A stretch of DNA of 64,000 bases from Auanema rhodensis (taxonomy: Eukaryota > Animalia > Nematoda), in contig OZ059896.1 of assembly GCA_964057225.1 (NCBI GenBank), positions 2,728,001 to 2,792,000 of the forward strand, given 5' to 3'. Positions 48,401-57,000 of the stretch are shown here, in pieces. Below the pieces are notes generated by a model, which made no database searches, was not told the DNA's origin, and saw only the letters and a program-made list of their open reading frames with translations. The stretch's first letter is position 1. Every line of letters begins with the position of its first letter. A program made the position numbers and the translations under genes.

Positions 48401-49145
48401 AGTTCACGTAAATTTCAAAGTCATGGTTACCATGCACCAATATTAATAAAAATTTGTTTTTAAACTAATATGAACATGGGGAATCTAATTTTGAAAACCG
48501 CATCTCTTTATCTTTCACGTGAAGCGAGTTACATACCAAGTGCACATCACGTGTACATTTAATTAGCATAAATTAAAGTTCACGTAAATTTCAAAGTCAT
48601 GGTTACCATGAACCAATATCAATAAAAATTTGTTTTTAGACTAATATTTACATGGGGAATCTAATTTTGAAAATCGCATCTCTTTATCTTTCACGTGAAG
48701 CGAGTTACATACCAAGTGCACATCACGTGTACATTTAATTAGCATAAATTAAAGTTCACGTAAATTTCAAAGTCATGGTTACCATGAACCAATATCAATA
48801 AAAATTTGTTTTTAGACTAATATGGACATGGGGAATCTAATTTTGAAAACCGCATCTCTTTATCTTTCACGTGAAGCGAGTTACATACCAAGTGCACATC
48901 ACGTGTACATTTAATTAGCATAAATTAAAGTTCACGTAAATTTCAAAGTCATGGTTACCATGCACCAATATTAATAAAAATTTGTTTTTAGACTAATATG
49001 GACATGGGGAATCTAATTTTGAAAACCGCATCTCTTTATCTTTCACGTGAAGCGAGTTACATACCAAGTGCACATCACGTGTACATTTAATTAGCATAAA
49101 TTAAAGTTCACGTAAATTTCAAAGTCATGGTTACCATGAACCAAT

Positions 49146-49415
49146 TTCCGCGCCGTGACCTCATTCCGCGCCGTGACCTCATTCCGCGCCGTGACCTCAT
49201 TCCGCGCCGTGACCTCATTCCGCGCCGTGACCTCATTCCGCGCCGTGACCTTTTTCCGCGCCGTGACCTCATTCCGCGCCGTGACCTCATTCCGCGCCGT
49301 GACCTCATTCCGCGCCGTGACCTCATTCCGCGCCGTGACCTCATTCCGCGCCGTGACCTCATTCCGCGCCGTGACCTCATTCCGCGCCGTGACCTCATTC
49401 CGCGCCGTGACCTCA
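49146..49415 (+). repeat. 15 x 18-bp GC-rich tandem repeat TTCCGCGCCGTGACCTCA at the LINE 5' end
   Basis: 270 bp equals 15 whole units. Fourteen are identical; unit 6 (49236-49253) ends CCTTT instead of CCTCA. Confidence 0.98.
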
Positions 49416-49429
49416 ACGTGAGCGGTCGT
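49395..49429 (+). promoter_or_regulatory. Putative internal Pol II core promoter: Inr TCATTC (A+1 = 49397) plus DPE GGTCGT (+28 to +33)
   Basis: TCATTC (49395-49400) matches the Drosophila Inr TCAKTY. GGTCGT (49424-49429) matches DPE RGWYV(T) at the canonical spacing, and +24 (49420) is G. Inr/DPE internal promoters are established for jockey-type LINEs. Activity here is inferred. Confidence 0.6.
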
Positions 49430-49665
49430 TTGCTGTCGATCAATAGCTGCTGTTCAAGTTTACGCCGGACTGGTTTTTTTCAAGGTACGCTACTTTTTCC
49501 TGTTTTTATACATTTATTCTAATTTTTTTTCATTTATTCTTTCTTGTCCATTACTCACTTTTTTACTTATCTTTCTCATTTGTATCACCTATCTTTTCTC
49601 CATTTTCACTTGTTTTTATCTCTCTATTTTTCCTATTTTCATTCACTTTTTTTTTCAATATTATC

Positions 49666-50715
49666 ATGTCAGTTGTAACAAAAGATTTTTTTACTGAAAC
49701 ACTTGATGTTCTTTCCAAATCTCTTCGTGATTCTTTTTCACAACTTTCTGCTGAAATTAAAAACGAGCTGAACAACATTAAAACCAATGTTGCGGTTAAT
49801 GAAATGCGTATTAAAAATCTCGAAGACGATTTCAAGTTACGTATTGAGGGTTTAGAAAAGAAATTTCTTAATGTATCAAAATCTATTGTTACTTCTACCT
49901 CTCAATCATCCTCTTCTACTGTTCTGTGTCAGGTTCAAAAAGTTAGATCTGAGGAGTCAAAGTTTTCCTATCGTTTGAATAGAGCGGTGTGGTTTCGTGT
50001 TCCCCACGACTCATCCGAACTACCCTCGGACCCCACTTCTCTCCTAAAACTTGTCGTTGAAAAATCTAACGACTCTACTTTGACTTCTCTCATTAACAGC
50101 AACCAAATTACTATAACCCGTTCAACTCTAAAATCTAAATCTCTTGGTCCTCTTGTAATTTCATGTTCAACAGTTGATTTACGTGACAAAATTATTGATA
50201 TCATTAAGTCCAACAAAGCGAAATGCTTTGCTTGTTTGTCAAAAACTTTTATTCGCCGCGACTATCTTCCTTTCGAGGTAGAAATAGAAAAAAAACTACG
50301 TGAGGAAGCTAAAAATAAAAATCTGGACAATAATGAATCAATTTACCTTGTACGCGACCTTAAACTTATCAAGGTTCTTCGTAAATCAACTTCACCCTCT
50401 ATTCATGTTCTCTCAAACATTAATGCTTCTCAAAATGTCTCCAGTCTCTGTCCTGTGGTCCAAAATGACCCTATCGTTCCGTCTGTGTCCGACACTGTTG
50501 TAATATCCAGTCCGCCTTCTAAATCTGGTAGGAATAGCCGTTCAGCAGGTAGATCCAAACCTCTTTCTACGGTTGAGAGATTTTCAATCAGCCCCAGAAA
50601 GAGGAAAAATCCCCCACGCTGTACTAAAACCAATTCCGAGTACCATACCAGATCTAAAAGCGGTTCTAATATAACATCTCAACCTGAGTCTGATACGAAC
50701 AGGTTATTTCGTTAA
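49666..50715 (+). CDS. LINE ORF1 protein, 349 aa (putative RNA-binding/chaperone)
   Basis: ATG-initiated, intact, directly upstream of ORF2. N-terminal heptad-like segment (LSAEIKNELNNIK..IKNLEDDFKLRIEGLEKKF), central FIRRDY..EKKLREEA..YLVRDLKL segment resembling CR1-type ORF1s, basic Ser/Pro-rich tail. No CCHC knuckle. Confidence 0.85.
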   Translation: MSVVTKDFFTETLDVLSKSLRDSFSQLSAEIKNELNNIKTNVAVNEMRIKNLEDDFKLRIEGLEKKFLNVSKSIVTSTSQSSSSTVLCQVQKVRSEESKFSYRLNRAVWFRVPHDSSELPSDPTSLLKLVVEKSNDSTLTSLINSNQITITRSTLKSKSLGPLVISCSTVDLRDKIIDIIKSNKAKCFACLSKTFIRRDYLPFEVEIEKKLREEAKNKNLDNNESIYLVRDLKLIKVLRKSTSPSIHVLSNINASQNVSSLCPVVQNDPIVPSVSDTVVISSPPSKSGRNSRSAGRSKPLSTVERFSISPRKRKNPPRCTKTNSEYHTRSKSGSNITSQPESDTNRLFR

Positions 50716-53563
50716 GGCTTCACAACCGTCAACTACGTCCAGTTCCTGTGTCCCTGTTAATTTTTCTGTTCATTGTTATAATGCACGCTCTATTCTCAAC
50801 AAATTTCATTTTCTTACTACTATCCATAGTATTTCATCTCCTGATATCATTGCTATATCAGAATCCTGGCTTTTTCCCAATTTCAACTCTAATCATATTC
50901 CGCTCGGTAACTATTACAATCTATTCAGAGCCGACAAGTGTACAGCCCGTGGCGGCGGCACTCTTATCTTCATCAAAAAATCTATTAACTCTACCTTACT
51001 TTCTTGTTCTTCTCAATCTTCTTCCGTCCAATTCATCAACATACTCATCTCTTCTATCAACACAGTTTTTTCGGTTTGTTACCGCTCTCCCTCTTCTCTT
51101 CATTCCGATTTTTCTCATTATCTTTCAGATCTTACTGGCCATATAAAAAACCGTTCATTTCTCATCACAGGTGATTTAAATTTTCCCTACATCAACTGGG
51201 ATCTTTCTGAATCTTCCCGCCCGTCCCCCTCCAGTGGATCTATTTTTCAATTTTTGAAAGATAGCTGTTCGGATCAGCTGGTAAATTTTCCTACCCGGGG
51301 AAAATATATTCTCGACTACATCATCACAAATAATTCTACTATGGTCAGTAACATAGTCCGTTCCTCCCCTTTAGGTAACTCCGACCACTACTCTGTCATT
51401 TTTTCTATACTCAGCAACTCTGTCAGATCGGATTTGTCTCTTCCTCCCGTTGTTTCACCTATCAATTCTTCTTTACCAAACTTTGCTCAACTCAATTTTC
51501 TTCGGGCGGATTACAACATAATTAACCACCACCTTGCCAGCATCGACTTTGCTACGGAACTTTCCGTTCTTACTCCTCTGGACTCCTACACAAAATTTAT
51601 CGAAATTATTCACTCTGTCATTAACAGGTTTGTTCCCTATAAGCAGCCAAAACGAAAGAACAAAATCGATAAAGAAATTGCTAGTCTTTCTAGTTTTATC
51701 AGCAGACTTAGTTCATCTATCTGCCCTCGAGACGAACTTCATCGCAAAAAACTGACTATCAAGCTTGATAGACTTCTGAAACTTAAATCTGCTTCTGAAG
51801 AAGAGAAAACCGCAGCTCTCAACAACCCTAGAATTTTCTATCAATTTTGCAGAGCTCGTCTTGGAGCATGCACTTCAGATATCCCCACCATTAAATGTGA
51901 AAACAACACGTACTCATCCGACAGCGATAAAGCATCTGTTTTCGCAGATACTTTTTTTGTCAAACCAGGATCTTCTTTCAAAAAAATAAATCCTTCCCCT
52001 GCTTTTTCTTCTACCATAGACTTCATAGATATTTCTCCGGACAAAGTCTACAAGGTTCTTTCTCGTCTTCCTCTTAGATTTTCAACTTCTCCGGACGGAA
52101 TTCCTTACTACTTTCTCAAACAATGCGCTTTCTCTCTCACTCTCCCACTGGCTTTCATTTTTCACAATCTTCTCGTTTCCTCATCCTGTCCTCCTGCTTG
52201 GAAAAAAGCTTGGATTCGACCAATCTTCAAATCCGGCAATCGTTCTACTCCTTCCAATTATCGTCCTATATCTCTTACTCCTAGTCTCTCCAAGGTTTTT
52301 GAGCGTCTTATAAGCTCTCCCCTTCTCAACTTTGGCATTTCAACCGGTTCAATATCTTCTAACCAACACGCTTTTCTTCCTAAGCGTAATACGGTTTCAG
52401 CCATTATCAACAGTCATATTGCTTGGAGATCATCTATCGACAAAAACTTACCAGCTTTTGTTGCATTCATAGATTTCTCAAAAGCATTTGACCTCATCAA
52501 TCACTCTATACTCATCCACAAACTTCACTCCATTGGTGTGCGTGGCTCTCTTCTATCATTTCTCAAAAATTTCATCACAAACAGATCTTACTCAGTTTTG
52601 GTCAATAATTCTCTCTCCAACTCTACCAATTTATTGTGTGGCGTTCCCCAAGATACTGTTTTAGGCCCTCTTCTTTTTCTTTTTTACATCAACGACATCA
52701 CATCTTTTCTCCCTGATGACGTTCATTCCACTTTATTTGCTGACGATCTCAAGCTGTACAGCACTAACCGGGTAAGTCTTCAAAATGCACTCAATTCTCT
52801 TAATGATTGGTGTAACAACAACGGAATGAGAGTCAACACAAGCAAAACTAAAATAATGGTGTTTTCTGATGATAGCTCATCTCAAAAAATTGAAAAAACG
52901 TTTTCTTTCGGTGAGTTCCCTTTGTCTCTAGCATCAAGCTATAAAGACCTCGGAGTTTTAACAGACCAAAACTTATCATTTGGTAGTCACATCAACTATG
53001 TTAGCAACTTGGCAGCTCAAAAATGCCGCATTATCCTACGTTGTTTTCATTCTAGATCCCCGGTCTTAATGTTTAGACTTTTTTGTTGCTATGTTCGTCC
53101 TATTCTTGAGTACGCATCAGTCGTATGGTCACCACAGGATAACAAAAACAAAGCTCGTATAGAAAACGTACAGAAAAAGTTTTTGCGTGCAGTTTTTTGT
53201 AGGGCAGGAATTTTTTCTAGCTACGCCGATCAGCTTACCGCTCTTCAAGCCGATGATCTATCAACCAGAAGGCTGGTAACCGATCTTTTATTTTATTTTA
53301 ACCATATTAAAGCTGAGGCAGAATTTAGAATTTTTGAAATTAAACTTTTTTCTCACTCTCTACGTAGACACCAATGGAATGTTGTTTTTCCGAATCTTCG
53401 GAAAAACACTTCAAGAAACGGCATCGAATACAGAGCTATAAAGGCATGGAATTCCTTACCTGAGAACCTAATTCAACAAACAAAAATCGGAAGCTTCAAG
53501 AAACACCTCTACAATGCCCTACGAGGCTCACAACATGATTCTTCCACATTTTTATGTAGTTAA
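50675..53563 (+). CDS. LINE ORF2: APE endonuclease + reverse transcriptase (962 sense codons stop-to-stop; true start unknown)
   Basis: Manual translation shows the frame of the 51254 ORF stays open back to TAA at 50672-50674. It contains APE motifs YNARS, PDIIAISESWL, RGGG, YRSP, GDLNFP, LDY, SDH and RT motifs SPDGIP, PIFK, NYRPISL, KVFE, FIDFSKAFD, GVPQD, FADD (52736-52747), YKDLGV. No internal stop or frameshift. Confidence 0.95.
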   Translation, partial: HLNLSLIRTGYFVKASQPSTTSSSCVPVNFSVHCYNARSILNKFHFLTTIHSISSPDIIAISESWLFPNFNSNHIPLGNYYNLFRADKCTARGGGTLIFIKKSINSTLLSCSSQSSSVQFINILISSINTVFSVCYRSPSSLHSDFSHYLSDLTGHIKNRSFLITGDLNFPYINWDLSESSRPSPSSGSIFQFLKDSCSDQLVNFPTRGKYILDYIITNNSTMVSNIVRSSPLGNSDHYSVIFSILSNSVRSDLSLPPVVSPINSSLPNFAQLNFLRADYNIINHHLASIDFATELSVLTPLDSYTKFIEIIHSVINRFVPYKQPKRKNKIDKEIASLSSFISRLSSSICPRDELHRKKLTIKLDRLLKLKSASEEEKTAALNNPRIFYQFCRARLGACTSDIPTIKCENNTYSSDSDKASVFADTFFVKPGSSFKKINPSPAFSSTIDFIDISPDKVYKVLSRLPLRFSTSPDGIPYYFLKQCAFSLTLPLAFIFHNLLVSSSCPPAWKKAWIRPIFKSGNRSTPSNYRPISLTPSLSKVFERLISSPLLNFGISTGSISSNQHAFLPKRNTVSAIINSHIAWRSSIDKNLPAFVAFIDFSKAFDLINHSILIHKLHSIGVRGSLLSFLKNFITNRSYSVLVNNSLSNSTNLLCGVPQDTVLGPLLFLFYINDITSFLPDDVHSTLFADDLKLYSTNRVSLQNALNSLNDWCNNNGMRVNTSKTKIMVFSDDSSSQKIEKTFSFGEFPLSLASSYKDLGVLTDQNLSFGSHINYVSNLAAQKCRIILRCFHSRSPVLMFRLFCCYVRPILEYASVVWSPQDNKNKARIENVQKKFLRAVFCRAGIFSSYADQLTALQADDLSTRRLVTDLLFYFNHIKAEAEFRIFEIKLFSHSLRRHQWNVVFPNLRKNTSRNGIEYRAIKAWNSLPENLIQQTKIGSFKKHLYNALRGSQHDSSTFLCS

Positions 53564-54042
53564 GTTCATTCTTGGTTATAATCTCTTTGTTTTGTTTTTT
53601 TTTCATATTACTCTTCGCGTTTTTGTTTTTTTCTCTTTAAATGTTTTTCTGATTATGACTAAGTGCGACAGTTTCATTTCTTTTTTCCAACCCTTCTACA
53701 CTTCTTGTTACTTCGCTTCAAATCTTATAGACATGAGTCATACGGATTGAATGCAAGTTACCTCCTATTGTTAGAACGGGCTCGGCTCGAATCATGAGTA
53801 CCTCCGTACCTAACAACTACCAACCGGAGGTCAGCAATTCGCTGAACAAAACCCCCTGTTCTCACTGGAAAAATTTGAAAGAAACTGCTCACTGCAACTC
53901 ATTCTCAGATCATTCTCTCCCTAACTATGTTTTATAATGTTTCCTATTTTTCCTGTTCCTATTGTAAGGTTCTTATACATCCTACTACACAACTATTTAC
54001 TCATTTCGTTAAACCTGTAATATTGAACATTAAACCAATAAA
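53564..54042 (+). other. LINE 3' UTR (about 480 nt), T-rich with a structured GC-richer core
   Basis: Lies between the ORF2 stop and the return to satellite; complementary segments at 53773-53862. Confidence 0.85.
54037..54042 (+). terminator. AATAAA polyadenylation-signal-like hexamer at the LINE 3' terminus
   Basis: ..TAAACC-AATAAA-CGTGTACATTT..; its last 1-2 A residues are shared with the satellite. No poly(A) follows. Confidence 0.5.
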
Positions 54043-57000
54043 CGTGTACATTTAATTAGCATAAATTAAAGTTCACGTAAATTTCAAAGTCATGGTTACC
54101 ATGCACCAATATCAATAAAAATTTGTTTTTAGAATAATATGGACATGGGGAATCTAATTTTGAAAACCGCATCTCTTTATCTTTCACGTGAAGCGAGTTA
54201 CATACCAAGTGCACATCACGTGTACACTTAATTAGCATAAATTAATGTTCACGTAAATTTCAAAGTCATGGTTACCATGCACCAATATCAATAAAAATTT
54301 GTTTTTAGACTAATATGGACATGGGGAATCTAATTTTGAAAACCGCATCTCTTTATCTTTCAAGTGAAGCGAGTTACATACCAAGTGCACATCACGTGTA
54401 CATTTAATTAGCATAAATTAAAGTTCACGTAAATTTCAAAGTCATGGTTACCATGCACCAATATCAATAAAAATTTGTTTTTAGACTAATATGGACATGG
54501 GGAATCTAATTTTGAAAATCGCATCTCTTTATCTTTCACGTGAAGCGAGTTACATACCAAGTGCACATCACGTGTACATTTAATTAGCATAAATTAAAGT
54601 TCACGTAAATTTCAAAGTCATGGTTACCATGAACCAATATCAATAAAAATTTGTTTTTAGACTAATACGGACATGGGGAATCTAATTTTGAAAACCGCAT
54701 CTCTTTATCTTTTACGTGAAGCGAGTTACATACCAAGTGCACATACGTGTACATTTAATTAGCATAAATTAAAGTTCACGTAAATTTCAAAGTCATGGTT
54801 ACCATGCACCAATATCAATAAAAATTTGTTTTTAGACTAATATGGACATGGGGAATCTAATTTTGAAAATCGCATCTCTTTATCTTTCACGTGAAGCGAG
54901 TTACATACCAAGTGCACATCACGTGTACATTTAATTAGCATAAATTAAAGTTCACGTAAATTTCAAAGTCATGGTTACCATGAACCAATATCAATAAAAA
55001 TTTGTTTTTAGAATAATATGGACATGGGGAATCTAATTTTGAAAACCGCATCTCTTTATCTTTCACGTGAAGCGAGTTACATACCAAGTGCACATCACGT
55101 GTACACTTAATTAGCATAAATTAATGTTCACGTAAATTTCAAAGTCATGGTTACCATGCACCAATATCAATAAAAATTTGTTTTTAGACTAATATGGACA
55201 TGGGGAATCTAATTTTGAAAACCGCATCTCTTTATCTTTCAAGTGAAGCGAGTTACATACCAAGTGCACATCACGTGTACATTTAATTAGCATAAATTAA
55301 AGTTCACGTAAATTTCAAAGTCATGGTTACCATGCACCAATATCAATAAAAATTTGTTTTTAGACTAATATGGACATGGGGAATCTAATTTTGAAAATCG
55401 CATCTCTTTATCTTTCACGTGAAGCGAGTTACATACCAAGTGCACATCACGTGTACATTTAATTAGCATAAATTAAAGTTCACGTAAATTTCAAAGTCAT
55501 GGTTACCATGAACCAATATCAATAAAAATTTGTTTTTAGACTAATACGGACATGGGGAATCTAATTTTGAAAACCGCATCTCTTTATCTTTTACGTGAAG
55601 CGAGTTACATACCAAGTGCACATACGTGTACATTTAATTAGCATAAATTAAAGTTCACGTAAATTTCAAAGTCATGGTTACCATGCACCAATATCAATAA
55701 AAATTTGTTTTTAGACTAATATGGACATGGGGAATCTAATTTTGAAAATCGCATCTCTTTATCTTTCACGTGAAGCGAGTTACATACCAAGTGCACATCA
55801 CGTGTACATTTAATTAGCATAAATTAAAGTTCACGTAAATTTCAAAGTCATGGTTACCATGAACCAATATCAATAAAAATTTGTTTTTAGACTAATACGG
55901 ACATGGGGAATCTAATTTTGAAAACCGCATCTCTTTATCTTTTACGTGAAGCGAGTTACATACCAAGTGCACATCACGTGTACATTTAATTAGCATAAAT
56001 TAAAGTTCACGTAAATTTCAAAGTCATGGTTACCATGAACCAATATCAATAAAAATTTGTTTTTAGACTAATATGGACATGGGGAATCTAATTTTGAAAA
56101 CCGCATCTCTTTATCTTTCACGTGAAGCGAGTTACATACCAAGTGCACATCACGTGTACATTTAATTAGCATAAATTAAAGTTCACGTAAATTTCAAAGT
56201 CATGGTTACCATGCACCAATATTAATAAAAATTTGTTTTTAGACTAATATGGACATGGGGAATCTAATTTTGAAAACCGCATCTCTTTATCTTTCACGTG
56301 AAGCGAGTTACATACCAAGTGCACATCACGTGTACATTTAATTAGCATAAATTAAAGTTCACGTAAATTTCAAAGTCATGGTTACCATGCACCAATATCA
56401 ATAAAAATTTGTTTTTAGACTAATATGGACATGGAGAATCTAATTTTGAAAACCGCATCTCTTTATCTTTCACGTGAAGCGAGTTACATACCAAGTGCAC
56501 ATCACGTGTACATTTAATTAGCATAAATTAAAGTTCACGTAAATTTCAAAGTCATGGTTACCATGCACCAATATCAATAAAAATTTGTTTTTAGAATAAT
56601 ATGGACATGGGGAATCTAATTTTGAAAACCGCATCTCTTTATCTTTCACGTGAAGCGAGTTACATACCAAGTGCACATCACGTGTACACTTAATTAGCAT
56701 AAATTAATGTTCACGTAAATTTCAAAGTCATGGTTACCATGCACCAATATCAATAAAAATTTGTTTTTAGACTAATATGGACATGGGGAATCTAATTTTG
56801 AAAACCGCATCTCTTTATCTTTCAAGTGAAGCGAGTTACATACCAAGTGCACATCACGTGTACATTTAATTAGCATAAATTAAAGTTCACGTAAATTTCA
56901 AAGTCATGGTTACCATGCACCAATATCAATAAAAATTTGTTTTTAGACTAATATGGACATGGGGAATCTAATTTTGAAAATCGCATCTCTTTATCTTTCA

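What the first reader, a model, noticed from the sequence alone, without database searches (positions are those of the whole stretch)
49146..49429. Possible self-regenerating promoter: tandem copies of the LINE's first 18 nt rebuild the initiator
Seen: the unit TTCCGCGCCGTGACCTCA has no Inr alone, but each unit junction creates TCA|TTC. Only the last junction (A at 49397) has a DPE match at +28 and G at +24. Known: internal-promoter LINEs lose bases upstream of +1 on retrotransposition, and some (mouse L1 monomers, Dictyostelium TRE5-A modules) carry much longer 5' repeats. Inference: the transcript starts near 49397, so the 14 upstream units are copies of its 5'-terminal 18 nt, added by reiterative RT slippage or template jumping. 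This would restore the Inr independent of the target site and insulate the promoter from satellite chromatin. The odd unit ending CCTTT could be an imprecise jump.
Basis: partly seen in the sequence, partly recalled or inferred. Interest (0 to 1): 0.85.

Follow-up and report, generated by a model that had tools for sequence, protein, structure and literature searches.

The report
Tip-growing repeat array heading nematode LINEs
A jumping gene (LINE) in a roundworm satellite starts with 15 copies of an 18-letter unit, and its relatives show that such arrays are regrown at the outer tip at new insertions, which may be how these elements keep their start signal.

Summary
At 49146-49415 there are 15 head-to-tail copies of TTCCGCGCCGTGACCTCA. 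They form the exact 5' end of a 4.9-kb LINE with open ORF1 and APE+RT ORF2, inserted in a 176-bp satellite.

The 18-mer is never unlinked from this LINE in the 181-Mb genome. All nine full-length copies of two subfamilies carry 3-26 units.

All nine related families (ORF1 identity down to 34%) carry 5' arrays of 17-19-nt, family-specific but related units, from 1 to more than 72 copies. Most units keep TGAC(C)T and an initiator-like TCAKTY.

- Sibling insertions with identical bodies have very different arrays.
- Private variant units always sit at the distal tip.
- DNA-level duplicates keep identical arrays.
- Two truncated copies (L081, L078) have their new terminus reiterated. In L063 and L076 the units include body bases.

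So growth at the tip during retrotransposition is well supported. Promoter function and the start site are untested, because no RNA data exist. The DPE match is absent from subfamily B, which has the same unit. A single start at 49397 is too strict.

The scan found the same phenomenon before on other DNA of this genome (s1-420614).

Closest known: mouse L1 monomer arrays. Verdict: a new variant of a known kind.

The parts
49146..49415 (+). 5'-terminal array: 15 tandem copies of the 18-nt unit TTCCGCGCCGTGACCTCA (unit 6 ends CCTTT)
   Evidence: TRF. Sequence. Unit-by-unit listing, (L043).
49395..49400 (+). Last unit junction TCATTC (initiator-like TCAKTY; A at 49397). The same hexamer recurs at the 12 other canonical junctions; the junction after variant unit 6 reads TTTTTC.
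   Evidence: Read. Motif check on circular units. Function untested.
49413..49429 (+). Start of the non-repeated body, TCAACGTGAGCGGTCGT. It contains the DPE-like GGTCGT at 49424-49429. The block is shared with families G and H, and resembles TCAGCGAGCGGTCGT in a Caenorhabditis remanei LINE.
   Evidence: L093:1381-1395. The segment is missing in subfamily B.
49416..49665 (+). Non-repeated 5' UTR (pyrimidine-rich)
   Evidence: 94-96% identical to the subfamily A2 copies.
49463..49490 (+). Conserved 5' UTR blocks CGCCGGACTGG and CAAGGTACGC, present in all nine related families
   Evidence: read in every family's upstream region.
49666..50715 (+). ORF1 (349 aa), no Pfam family, no homologues in the large protein database
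50675..53563 (+). ORF2 open frame (about 962 codons; 961 scanned, no ATG at its start): APE endonuclease (aa 54-240) plus reverse transcriptase (aa 525-734); no RNase H domain found
   Evidence: Best named relatives are Caenorhabditis RT proteins at 32-37% identity.
53564..54043 (+). 3' UTR. The element ends ...CCAATAAA with no poly(A).
   Evidence: Other copies' matches end at the same base.
49078..49145 (.). Satellite stretch next to the 5' junction. It recurs at 54044-54111 with one mismatch, so it is either a 68-bp target duplication or, more likely, a 108-bp target deletion.

Best explanation
The 15 units are a miniature 'monomer' array that forms the true 5' end of an APE+RT LINE. This architecture is shared by a whole lineage of at least nine LINE families in this nematode.

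Each unit, or unit junction, carries an initiator-like TCA(G/T)TY and usually a TGAC(C)T core. Transcription probably starts at one or several of these junctions, so an RNA carries one to many units. This step is inferred.

When the RNA is copied into DNA at a new site, the terminal 17-23 nt are re-copied over and over at the outer (5') tip. This happens by re-alignment of the nascent cDNA on the repeated template, or by repeated jumps back to the template end. The array therefore regrows, sometimes to dozens of units, and any oddity of the tip unit is amplified as a private block. Tip growth linked to insertion events is shown comparatively. The enzyme responsible is inferred to be the element's reverse transcriptase.

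The activity appears to work on any template end, because truncated copies can also acquire arrays. Selection then keeps units that carry the start signal. The net effect is that daughters regain a complete start signal and several copies of it. This is a 5'-end maintenance system comparable in logic to mouse L1 monomers and, mechanistically, to telomerase-like reiterative copying.
For: 1. Linkage. The two-unit pattern occurs at 9 loci only, and each lies directly 5' of the LINE UTR. All 80 hits of the 15-mer lie in these arrays, apart from one inverted 1.4-unit piece on a truncated copy.

2. Lineage-wide architecture. Nine families, with ORF1 identity to the window copy from 100% down to 34%, all have 5'-terminal arrays of 17-19-nt related units. 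Copy numbers run from about 1 to more than 72.7.

3. Conserved motifs. TCAKTY is present in 6 of 8 unit types (chance 1-7% each). TGAC is present in 7 of 8 (chance 5-8% each).

4. Arrays change with insertion events.
- Family G copies L073-L076 have 399/399 identical downstream sequence. Their arrays are 24 x 18 nt, 39 x 18 nt, 12 x 21 nt plus one 18-nt unit, and 40 x a different 21-nt unit.
- Family B copies L050-L052 are 255/255 identical, with about 12, 5 and 21 units.
- L076's 21-nt unit includes 3 body bases and exists at that locus only.

5. Polarity. Of 8 arrays with a variant block, canonical units lie next to the body in all 8. In the 7 whose tip was held, the private block reaches the distal tip (sign test on 8, p = 0.004).

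6. DNA-level duplicates keep identical arrays. L071/72 have flanks 995/1000 identical, L079/80 998/1000, and L060/61 are identical.

7. Newly seeded reiterations.
- L081 lacks the canonical units and the first 35 nt of the body. Its new end is repeated 4 x 17 nt exactly at the satellite junction.
- L078 has the terminal 22 nt doubled, plus inverted UTR pieces.
- L063 has irregular units that include body bases.

8. Phase. By eye, about 60% of copies begin within about 3 nt of the initiator-like A. Several arrays hold whole numbers of units in that phase. An extra T at the tip is common, and is amplified through the whole array in L058.

10. The Inr motif is enriched at C. elegans start sites (PMC3730107).
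Against: - No transcript data. The only listed runs are three small contig sets that hold the satellite but not the LINE. Start site, promoter activity and the number of units in the RNA are therefore unknown.
- Four of six 5'-truncated copies examined (L032, L036, L053, L085) show no reiteration. The activity is therefore not obligatory.
- A minority of copies start mid-unit, for example L046 and L054 at CCGTGACC.
- Array L069 has interspersed rather than polar variants.
- Rapid DNA-level minisatellite change cannot be strictly excluded. Only three duplicate pairs, with arrays of 35-164 nt, serve as the stability control.
- The enzyme is not identified. A host repair polymerase could make such templated additions.
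- The DPE match is not conserved across families.
Confidence: 0.6

Rival explanations
1. An inherited monomer promoter whose copy number changes only at the DNA level, by unequal exchange or replication slippage as in any minisatellite. Transcription starts at the outermost unit, and nothing is added during reverse transcription.
For: Variable unit number is typical of minisatellites. Unequal crossing-over is one of the two models proposed for mouse L1 monomers (PMC6454616). L069 and L091 show interspersed variants. The elements sit in recombination-prone satellite arrays.
Against: Private variant blocks lie at the distal tip, with canonical units next to the body in 8 of 8 arrays. Repeats are seeded exactly at the junction of truncated copies (L081, L078). 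DNA-level duplicates with 0.2-0.5% flank divergence keep identical arrays, while sibling insertions with 0% body divergence differ completely.
Confidence: 0.15
2. There is one start site at the last junction (A at 49397), positioned by a DPE at +28. Every RNA carries one unit, and all upstream units are added afresh at each insertion.
For: GGTCGT lies exactly at +28. Family C has GGTCGA at +28, and family G has GGTTGT at +28 from its last TCA (read). Some copies begin at the last junction (L057, L055). L076's array is explained by a founder RNA with one unit.
Against: Subfamily B has the same unit and copies with identical bodies, but lacks the GGTCGT segment. Families D, E and I have no match at +28. 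Many arrays retain 2-6 canonical proximal units beneath a private block. L065 and L066 share a variant in their third-last unit, so RNAs with several units are copied.
Confidence: 0.12
3. Tip reiteration is real but is made by a host repair polymerase during joining of the 5' junction (templated insertions of the polymerase-theta end-joining type), not by the LINE reverse transcriptase.
For: L078 combines direct and inverted short copies of nearby sequence at the junction. L095 has an inverted 1.4-unit piece. From general knowledge, not tested here: nematode germlines rely heavily on polymerase-theta end joining, which leaves short templated inserts.
Against: Arrays of 20 to more than 70 uniform units are far longer than known templated inserts. 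The narrow unit length (17-23 nt) across families suggests a fixed ruler tied to the element's own machinery.
Confidence: 0.13
4. The array is not a promoter. It acts at the RNA level, as a sacrificial 5' buffer or as binding sites for element proteins. Transcription is driven from elsewhere, such as the conserved CGGACTGG...CAAGGTACGC blocks, or read-through from the satellite.
For: The downstream blocks are conserved in all nine families, more so than the units. Satellite contigs are present in the putative RNA runs. The newly seeded unit in L081 has no TGACCT or TCAKTY.
Against: TCAKTY and TGAC are retained in most unit types despite rapid unit divergence. Copy 5' ends cluster at the initiator-like A. 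Elements at non-satellite sites and in both orientations have the same structure. No ribozyme or other Rfam family was found in the element.
Confidence: 0.15

Closest known systems
Mouse L1 (L1Md) monomer promoters
   Same: Tandem units lie at the 5' end, followed by a non-repeated stretch and ORF1. Unit number varies between copies. The outermost unit is often cut near a start site. Daughters lose units because transcription starts inside the array (0.6-1.8 monomers lost, PMC10620060). Arrays must be re-extended, with 'second-strand priming' or unequal crossing-over proposed and the mechanism unresolved (PMC6454616).
   Different: Units here are 17-19 nt, not about 200 bp. Arrays reach more than 70 units. 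The architecture is shared by nine diverged families with related units. Tip polarity, body-including units and seeding at truncated ends give direct comparative evidence for growth at the tip. The LINE clade and the host phylum differ.
Initiator/DPE internal promoters of insect LINEs (jockey, Doc, I factor)
   Same: A TCA(G/T)TY motif lies at the presumed first base. A downstream RGWYVT lies at +28 in the window copy. The promoter would lie inside the transcript.
   Different: The motif is reiterated in a tandem array. The DPE-like match is not conserved (absent in subfamily B and in families D, E and I). No start-site or activity data exist. DPE use in nematodes is not established.
Telomerase and rolling or reiterative reverse transcription (e.g. 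bacterial DRT2, PMC12039810)
   Same: A reverse transcriptase would copy a short template stretch repeatedly, by returning to its start, and so make head-to-tail repeats of fixed length.
   Different: Here the 'template' would be the 5' end of the element's own mRNA, not a dedicated RNA. The product becomes part of a transposon copy. The enzymology is wholly inferred.
Drosophila TART/HeT-A and Dictyostelium TRE5-A 5'-end solutions (recalled from memory, not re-read here)
   Same: They address the same problem: a non-LTR element must recover sequence upstream of its start site. Their solutions use repeated or duplicated terminal modules.
   Different: Those use long repeats, or the neighbour's 3' promoter. 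None uses 17-19-nt tip-growing arrays.

Membership tests
LINE (non-LTR retrotransposon) with APE + RT ORF2 | Apurinic-type endonuclease and reverse transcriptase in one ORF, preceded by ORF1; insertion without LTRs | tested here: met
   Pfam hits Exo_endo_phos, Exo_endo_phos_2 and RVT_1 in an open stretch of 961 codons. ORF1 lies upstream. The element is bounded by satellite on both sides.
CR1 clade of LINEs (label used by earlier notes) | Placement of the RT within the CR1 clade by phylogeny; CR1-type 3' end | not tested
   The only evidence is best hits to unnamed Caenorhabditis RT proteins. No reference tree was built. The 3' end has no poly(A), which is compatible but not diagnostic.
Monomer-type LINE 5' promoter (mouse L1 kind) | Tandem units at the extreme 5' end, upstream of a non-repeated UTR; number variable between copies | tested here: met
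   3.3 to 25.8 units in subfamilies A and B; about 1 to more than 72.7 across families.
Monomer-type LINE 5' promoter (mouse L1 kind) | Each unit has promoter activity and start sites | not testable with these tools
   No RNA runs hold the element. There is only motif evidence and clustering of copy 5' ends near the initiator-like A.
Monomer-type LINE 5' promoter (mouse L1 kind) | Unit length of about 200 bp with several factor sites | tested here: not met
   Units are 17-19 nt, and private variants are up to 24 nt.
Inr + DPE core promoter | Initiator TCAKTY with the A at the start site | tested here: inconclusive
   The motif is present at every canonical junction. The start site is unknown.
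Inr + DPE core promoter | RGWYV(T) at exactly +28 to +33, conserved and required | tested here: inconclusive
   Exact match in the window copy (49424-49429). A 5-of-6 match in family C and an exact match in family G from its last TCA. Absent in subfamily B (same unit) and in families D, E and I.

The most novel reading that the evidence does not exclude
The reverse transcriptase of this LINE lineage behaves like a telomerase on its own messenger. On running off any RNA 5' end, it processively re-copies the last 17-23 nt, a length possibly set by the enzyme's footprint on the RNA-DNA hybrid. This seeds and extends tandem arrays that rebuild the element's initiator. It would be a general, enzyme-encoded solution to the 5' end-replication problem of internal-promoter retrotransposons, and a mechanism for how LINE 'monomer' promoters arise.
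Probability: 0.3. Interest if true: 0.85.

Novelty: new variant of a known kind. Interest (0 to 1): 0.7.

Why it matters
How LINEs with internal promoters keep their first bases, and how monomer arrays such as those of mouse L1 are re-extended after each shortening, is still unresolved (PMC6454616).

This nematode offers a compact natural system for the question. The units are tiny, many families are young, and there are sibling insertions with identical bodies but different arrays. Newly seeded arrays occur at truncated ends.

It makes the question directly testable, by start-site mapping, pedigree sequencing and run-off assays with the ORF2 protein. If the element's own enzyme makes the arrays, it would also show a telomerase-like activity in a LINE reverse transcriptase.

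Tried and rejected
On 49362-54100, as the tool suggested, it laid contigs only on the satellite flank. No start-site information was obtained.
- RNA structure. The array plus UTR folds no better than shuffles (z = +0.56).
- Rfam. No family, and so no HDV-like ribozyme, in 48900-54200.
- The bacterial promoter and terminator scan is irrelevant to a eukaryote.
- ORF1 has no homologues in the large protein database, so ORF1-based comparison with other species was impossible.
- Caenorhabditis relatives. The C. remanei locus L093 shows no clear 5' array, only the shared GAGCGGTCGT block. The C. brenneri locus L094 was uninformative.
- Literature. Five searches found no description of short 5' arrays in nematode LINEs. 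The library is incomplete, so this is not proof of novelty.
- Species identity. It was sought in three papers on DNA elimination. The 176-bp satellite was not found, and the species is left unnamed.
- Further truncated copies could not be examined.
- Rejected: the 18-mer as an independent minisatellite, and the DPE as a required element (missing in subfamily B).

Full report
**What is in the window**

The whole 64-kb window is a 176-bp AT-rich satellite. It has a single insertion of higher GC content between about 49.1 and 54.0 kb.

The insertion (49146-54043) is a LINE.
- ORF1 spans 49666-50715.
- ORF2 is open from 50675 to 53563. It has an apurinic-type endonuclease and a reverse transcriptase, no ATG at its start and no RNase H domain.
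- The 3' UTR has no poly(A).
- The best named relatives of the RT are Caenorhabditis proteins at 32-37% identity.
- Earlier notes of this scan describe the genome as that of a roundworm that eliminates this satellite from body cells. I did not establish the species.

TRF finds 15.0 copies of TTCCGCGCCGTGACCTCA at 49146-49415 with 98% matches. One unit ends CCTTT.

Unit junctions read TCA|TTC. From the A at 49397, position +24 is G and positions +28 to +33 are GGTCGT. The array is the exact 5' end of the element: satellite ...ACCAAT, then the array, then TCAACGTGAGCGG....

**The 18-mer is never separate from the LINE**

A two-unit pattern occurs at nine loci in the 181-Mb genome. Each lies directly upstream of the LINE 5' UTR.

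The 15-mer core has 80 hits. Seventy-nine are in these arrays. One is an inverted 1.4-unit piece joined to a 5'-truncated copy.

The nine arrays belong to two subfamilies.
- Subfamily A has UTRs 94-100% identical to the window copy. Its arrays hold 15.0, 7.7, 3.3, 5.0 and at least 5 units.
- Subfamily B has UTRs only about 67% identical and ORF1 66% identical. Its arrays hold 11.9, 5.1, 21.1 and 25.8 units.

No full-length A or B copy lacks the array.

**The architecture is lineage-wide**

ORF1 searches found seven further families, with 57% to 34% identity. I read the region upstream of ORF1 in 45 copies.

| Family | ORF1 identity to window (%) | Unit | Length (nt) | Copy numbers seen |
|---|---|---|---|---|
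| A | 98-100 | TTCCGCGCCGTGACCTCA | 18 | 15.0, 7.7, 3.3, 5.0, at least 5 |
| B | 66 | TTCCGCGCCGTGACCTCA | 18 | 11.9, 5.1, 21.1, 25.8 |
| C | 54-56 | TTCCGCGATTTGACCTCA | 18 | under 1 to more than 72.7 |
| D | 57 | TTGACCTAGTTTCCTCG | 17 | 6.1; 2.8 (irregular) |
| E | 54 | CCCGTTCGTCAGTTGACCT | 19 | 6.0, 6.0 |
| F | 51-53 | CCCACTCGTCAGTTGACCT | 19 | 2.8 to 27.5 |
| G | 47-48 | TTTTCGACTCACACTACA | 18 | 3.2 to 40.1 |
| H | 38-39 | CAGTTGACCTAGTTTGT | 17 | 1 to 3.4 |
| I | 33-34 | TTTTGATCTTGTGACTCA | 18 | 1 to 6.9 |

The units are visibly related. TGAC(C)T is present in most; TCATT occurs in A, B, C and I; GTCAGT occurs in E, F and H; CCTAGTTT occurs in D and H. TCAKTY is present in 6 of 8 unit types and TGAC in 7 of 8. 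Shuffles of each unit give 1-7% and 5-8% respectively.

Downstream, all families share CGGACTGG and CAAGGTACGC-like blocks. Families A, G and H share a CGTGAG(Y)GGT(Y)G block at the start of the body. A Caenorhabditis remanei relative has TCAGCGAGCGGTCGT at a comparable place but no clear array.

**Arrays change with insertion events, at the outer tip**

- In family G, four copies are 399/399 identical downstream of the array. Their arrays are 24 units of 18 nt, 39 units of 18 nt, 12 units of 21 nt plus one 18-nt unit, and 40 units of a different 21-nt form.
- The last of these (L076) has a unit that includes three bases of the body (GACTCCTC|ACAC). It can only have been made by re-copying a segment that spans the unit-body boundary. 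It occurs nowhere else in the genome.
- In family B, three copies are 255/255 identical, with about 12, 5 and 21 units. In family F, L068 and L070 are 227/227 identical, with 19 and 11 units.
- Eight arrays have a block of private variant units: L050, L051, L054, L056, L059, L068, L070 and L075. Canonical units lie next to the body in all eight, and in the seven whose tip was held the private block reaches the distal tip (sign test on eight, p = 0.004).
- Three pairs are plainly DNA-level duplicates of one insertion. Their flanks are 995/1000, 998/1000 and 1000/1000 identical, and their arrays are identical.

Remodelling therefore goes with retrotransposition rather than with residence in the genome. 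This control rests on only three pairs.

**New seeding**

- L081 (family H) lacks the canonical units and the first 35 nt of the body. Its new terminus GGTATTCACTGTTGC, plus two extra bases, is repeated four times (17-nt period) exactly at the satellite junction. Downstream it is 98-99% identical to its relatives.
- L078 (family G) has its terminal 22 nt doubled, preceded by two inverted copies of a UTR piece.
- L063 (family D) has irregular units of 20 and 23 nt that include body bases.
- Four other truncated copies (L032, L036, L053, L085) show no reiteration. The activity is therefore facultative.
- An earlier follow-up of this scan, on other DNA of this genome, reports the same thing, including an array built from ORF1 coding sequence at a truncation point (s1-420614). 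I could not fetch that locus and did not test it. My cases are independent of it.

**Phase and tips**

By eye, about 60% of independent copies begin within about 3 nt of the A of the initiator-like motif. This was not scripted.
- The window copy begins TTCCGCG.
- L057 begins (A)TTCCGCG at the last junction, with no full unit.
- L086 begins ATTTT.
- L079 begins ACACTACA.

Several arrays hold whole numbers of units in that phase, for example 4.0 and 39.0 in family G.

An extra T at the tip is frequent (window, L048, L052, L064). In L058 the extra-T form fills the whole 15-unit array. This again suggests that the tip unit serves as the template.

A minority of copies begin mid-unit. L046 and L054 both begin at CCGTGACC.

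The core inference is well supported by comparison: upstream units are copies of the transcript's 5' end, added around reverse transcription.

Copies that begin at the last junction exist, so starts there are plausible. But arrays with several canonical proximal units beneath a private block show that RNAs with several units are also copied. So does the variant shared by L065 and L066 in their third-last unit. As in mouse L1, starts at several junctions are the simplest reading (PMC10620060).

The DPE is weak evidence. It is exact in the window copy, 5 of 6 in family C and exact in family G. It is missing in subfamily B, which has the same unit and copies with identical bodies, and in families D, E and I.

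The Inr motif is enriched at C. elegans start sites. The paper I read does not mention a DPE (PMC3730107).

Start site and promoter activity could not be tested. The only runs listed do not hold the element.

**Mechanism**

- Shown comparatively: growth at the tip, linked to insertion events, with units of 17-23 nt, from whatever sequence lies at the template end.
- Inferred: the element's reverse transcriptase re-aligns on the repeated template end, or jumps back to it.
- Speculative: the narrow unit length may reflect the enzyme's footprint on the RNA-DNA hybrid.
- Not excluded: a host repair polymerase. The inverted pieces in L078 and L095 would fit that.
- Argued against, but not excluded: purely DNA-level minisatellite change. 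Polarity, junction-exact seeding and the duplicate-pair control speak against it.

**Comparison and novelty**

The closest known system is the monomer promoter of mouse L1. Its daughters lose units, and its re-extension mechanism is unresolved (PMC10620060, PMC6454616).

This case differs in several ways.
- Units are ten times shorter.
- The arrangement is conserved across nine diverged families.
- It gives clear comparative evidence for how arrays regrow.

I found no description of it in five literature searches, which is not proof of novelty. I rate it a new variant of a known kind.

The scan noted the same phenomenon before in this genome (s1-420614).

**Limits**

- No transcript data were available.
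- The phase table was made by eye.
- The species was not identified.
- Clade assignment was not tested.
- No more genomic loci could be fetched.

Noticed in passing
window 49078-49145 and 54044-54111: The same 68-nt satellite stretch flanks the LINE on both sides, with one mismatch (ATGAACC versus ATGCACC). It is either a 68-bp target duplication or, more likely, joining in the next monomer with a 108-bp deletion. Most other copies have both junctions at the CACATCACGTG spot.
   Followed up: partly
junctions in L046-L091: Nearly all insertions lie at one of two spots of the satellite monomer: CACATCACGTG in sense orientation, and GAACTTTAATT in antisense orientation. A few lie in non-satellite DNA (L037, L071, L077, L089, L090, L092) or in another LINE copy (L050). 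This agrees with earlier notes on satellite-targeted LINEs.
   Followed up: partly
window 50675-50715: ORF2 is open from 50675, has no ATG and overlaps the end of ORF1 in another frame. This was already noted as s1-409970. How it is translated is unknown.
   Followed up: partly
window 49463-49490, and the same place in L055-L092: CGCCGGACTGG and CAAGGTACGC are conserved in the 5' UTR of all nine families, down to 34% ORF1 identity. They are more conserved than the units themselves. CAAG|GTACGC also resembles a splice donor. Function unknown.
   Followed up: no
L093:1381-1395 (Caenorhabditis remanei contig DS269285.1): A related LINE has TCAGCGAGCGGTCGT about 140 nt upstream of its ORF. This resembles the window's body start TCAACGTGAGCGGTCGT. 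The block may be an ancient 5'-end element of this LINE group.
   Followed up: partly
L095:930-965 (G000:C1:29234): An inverted 1.4-unit piece of the array is joined to a copy truncated at ORF1 residue ~170, next to satellite CACGTA. This looks like priming from the second target strand on the ACGTG at the start of the body (twin-priming-like).
   Followed up: partly
L037/L049 (G000:C8:26443717-26443932): A copy 99% identical to the window element has five units and a partial sixth, fused directly to ORF1 codon ~44 (CCGTGA|AATGCG, shared TGA). This is either an internal deletion or a template switch from inside ORF1 to the array.
   Followed up: no
L086 (G000:C3, family I): At the array tip, the T-run of the unit (CATTTTG) is expanded to runs of about 18 and 31 T. 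This is homopolymer slippage at the same tip where units are added.
   Followed up: no
window 54042-54100: Small public runs of the same species label (guessed to be RNA) hold contigs of the satellite but none of the LINE. Whether the satellite is transcribed is open.
   Followed up: no
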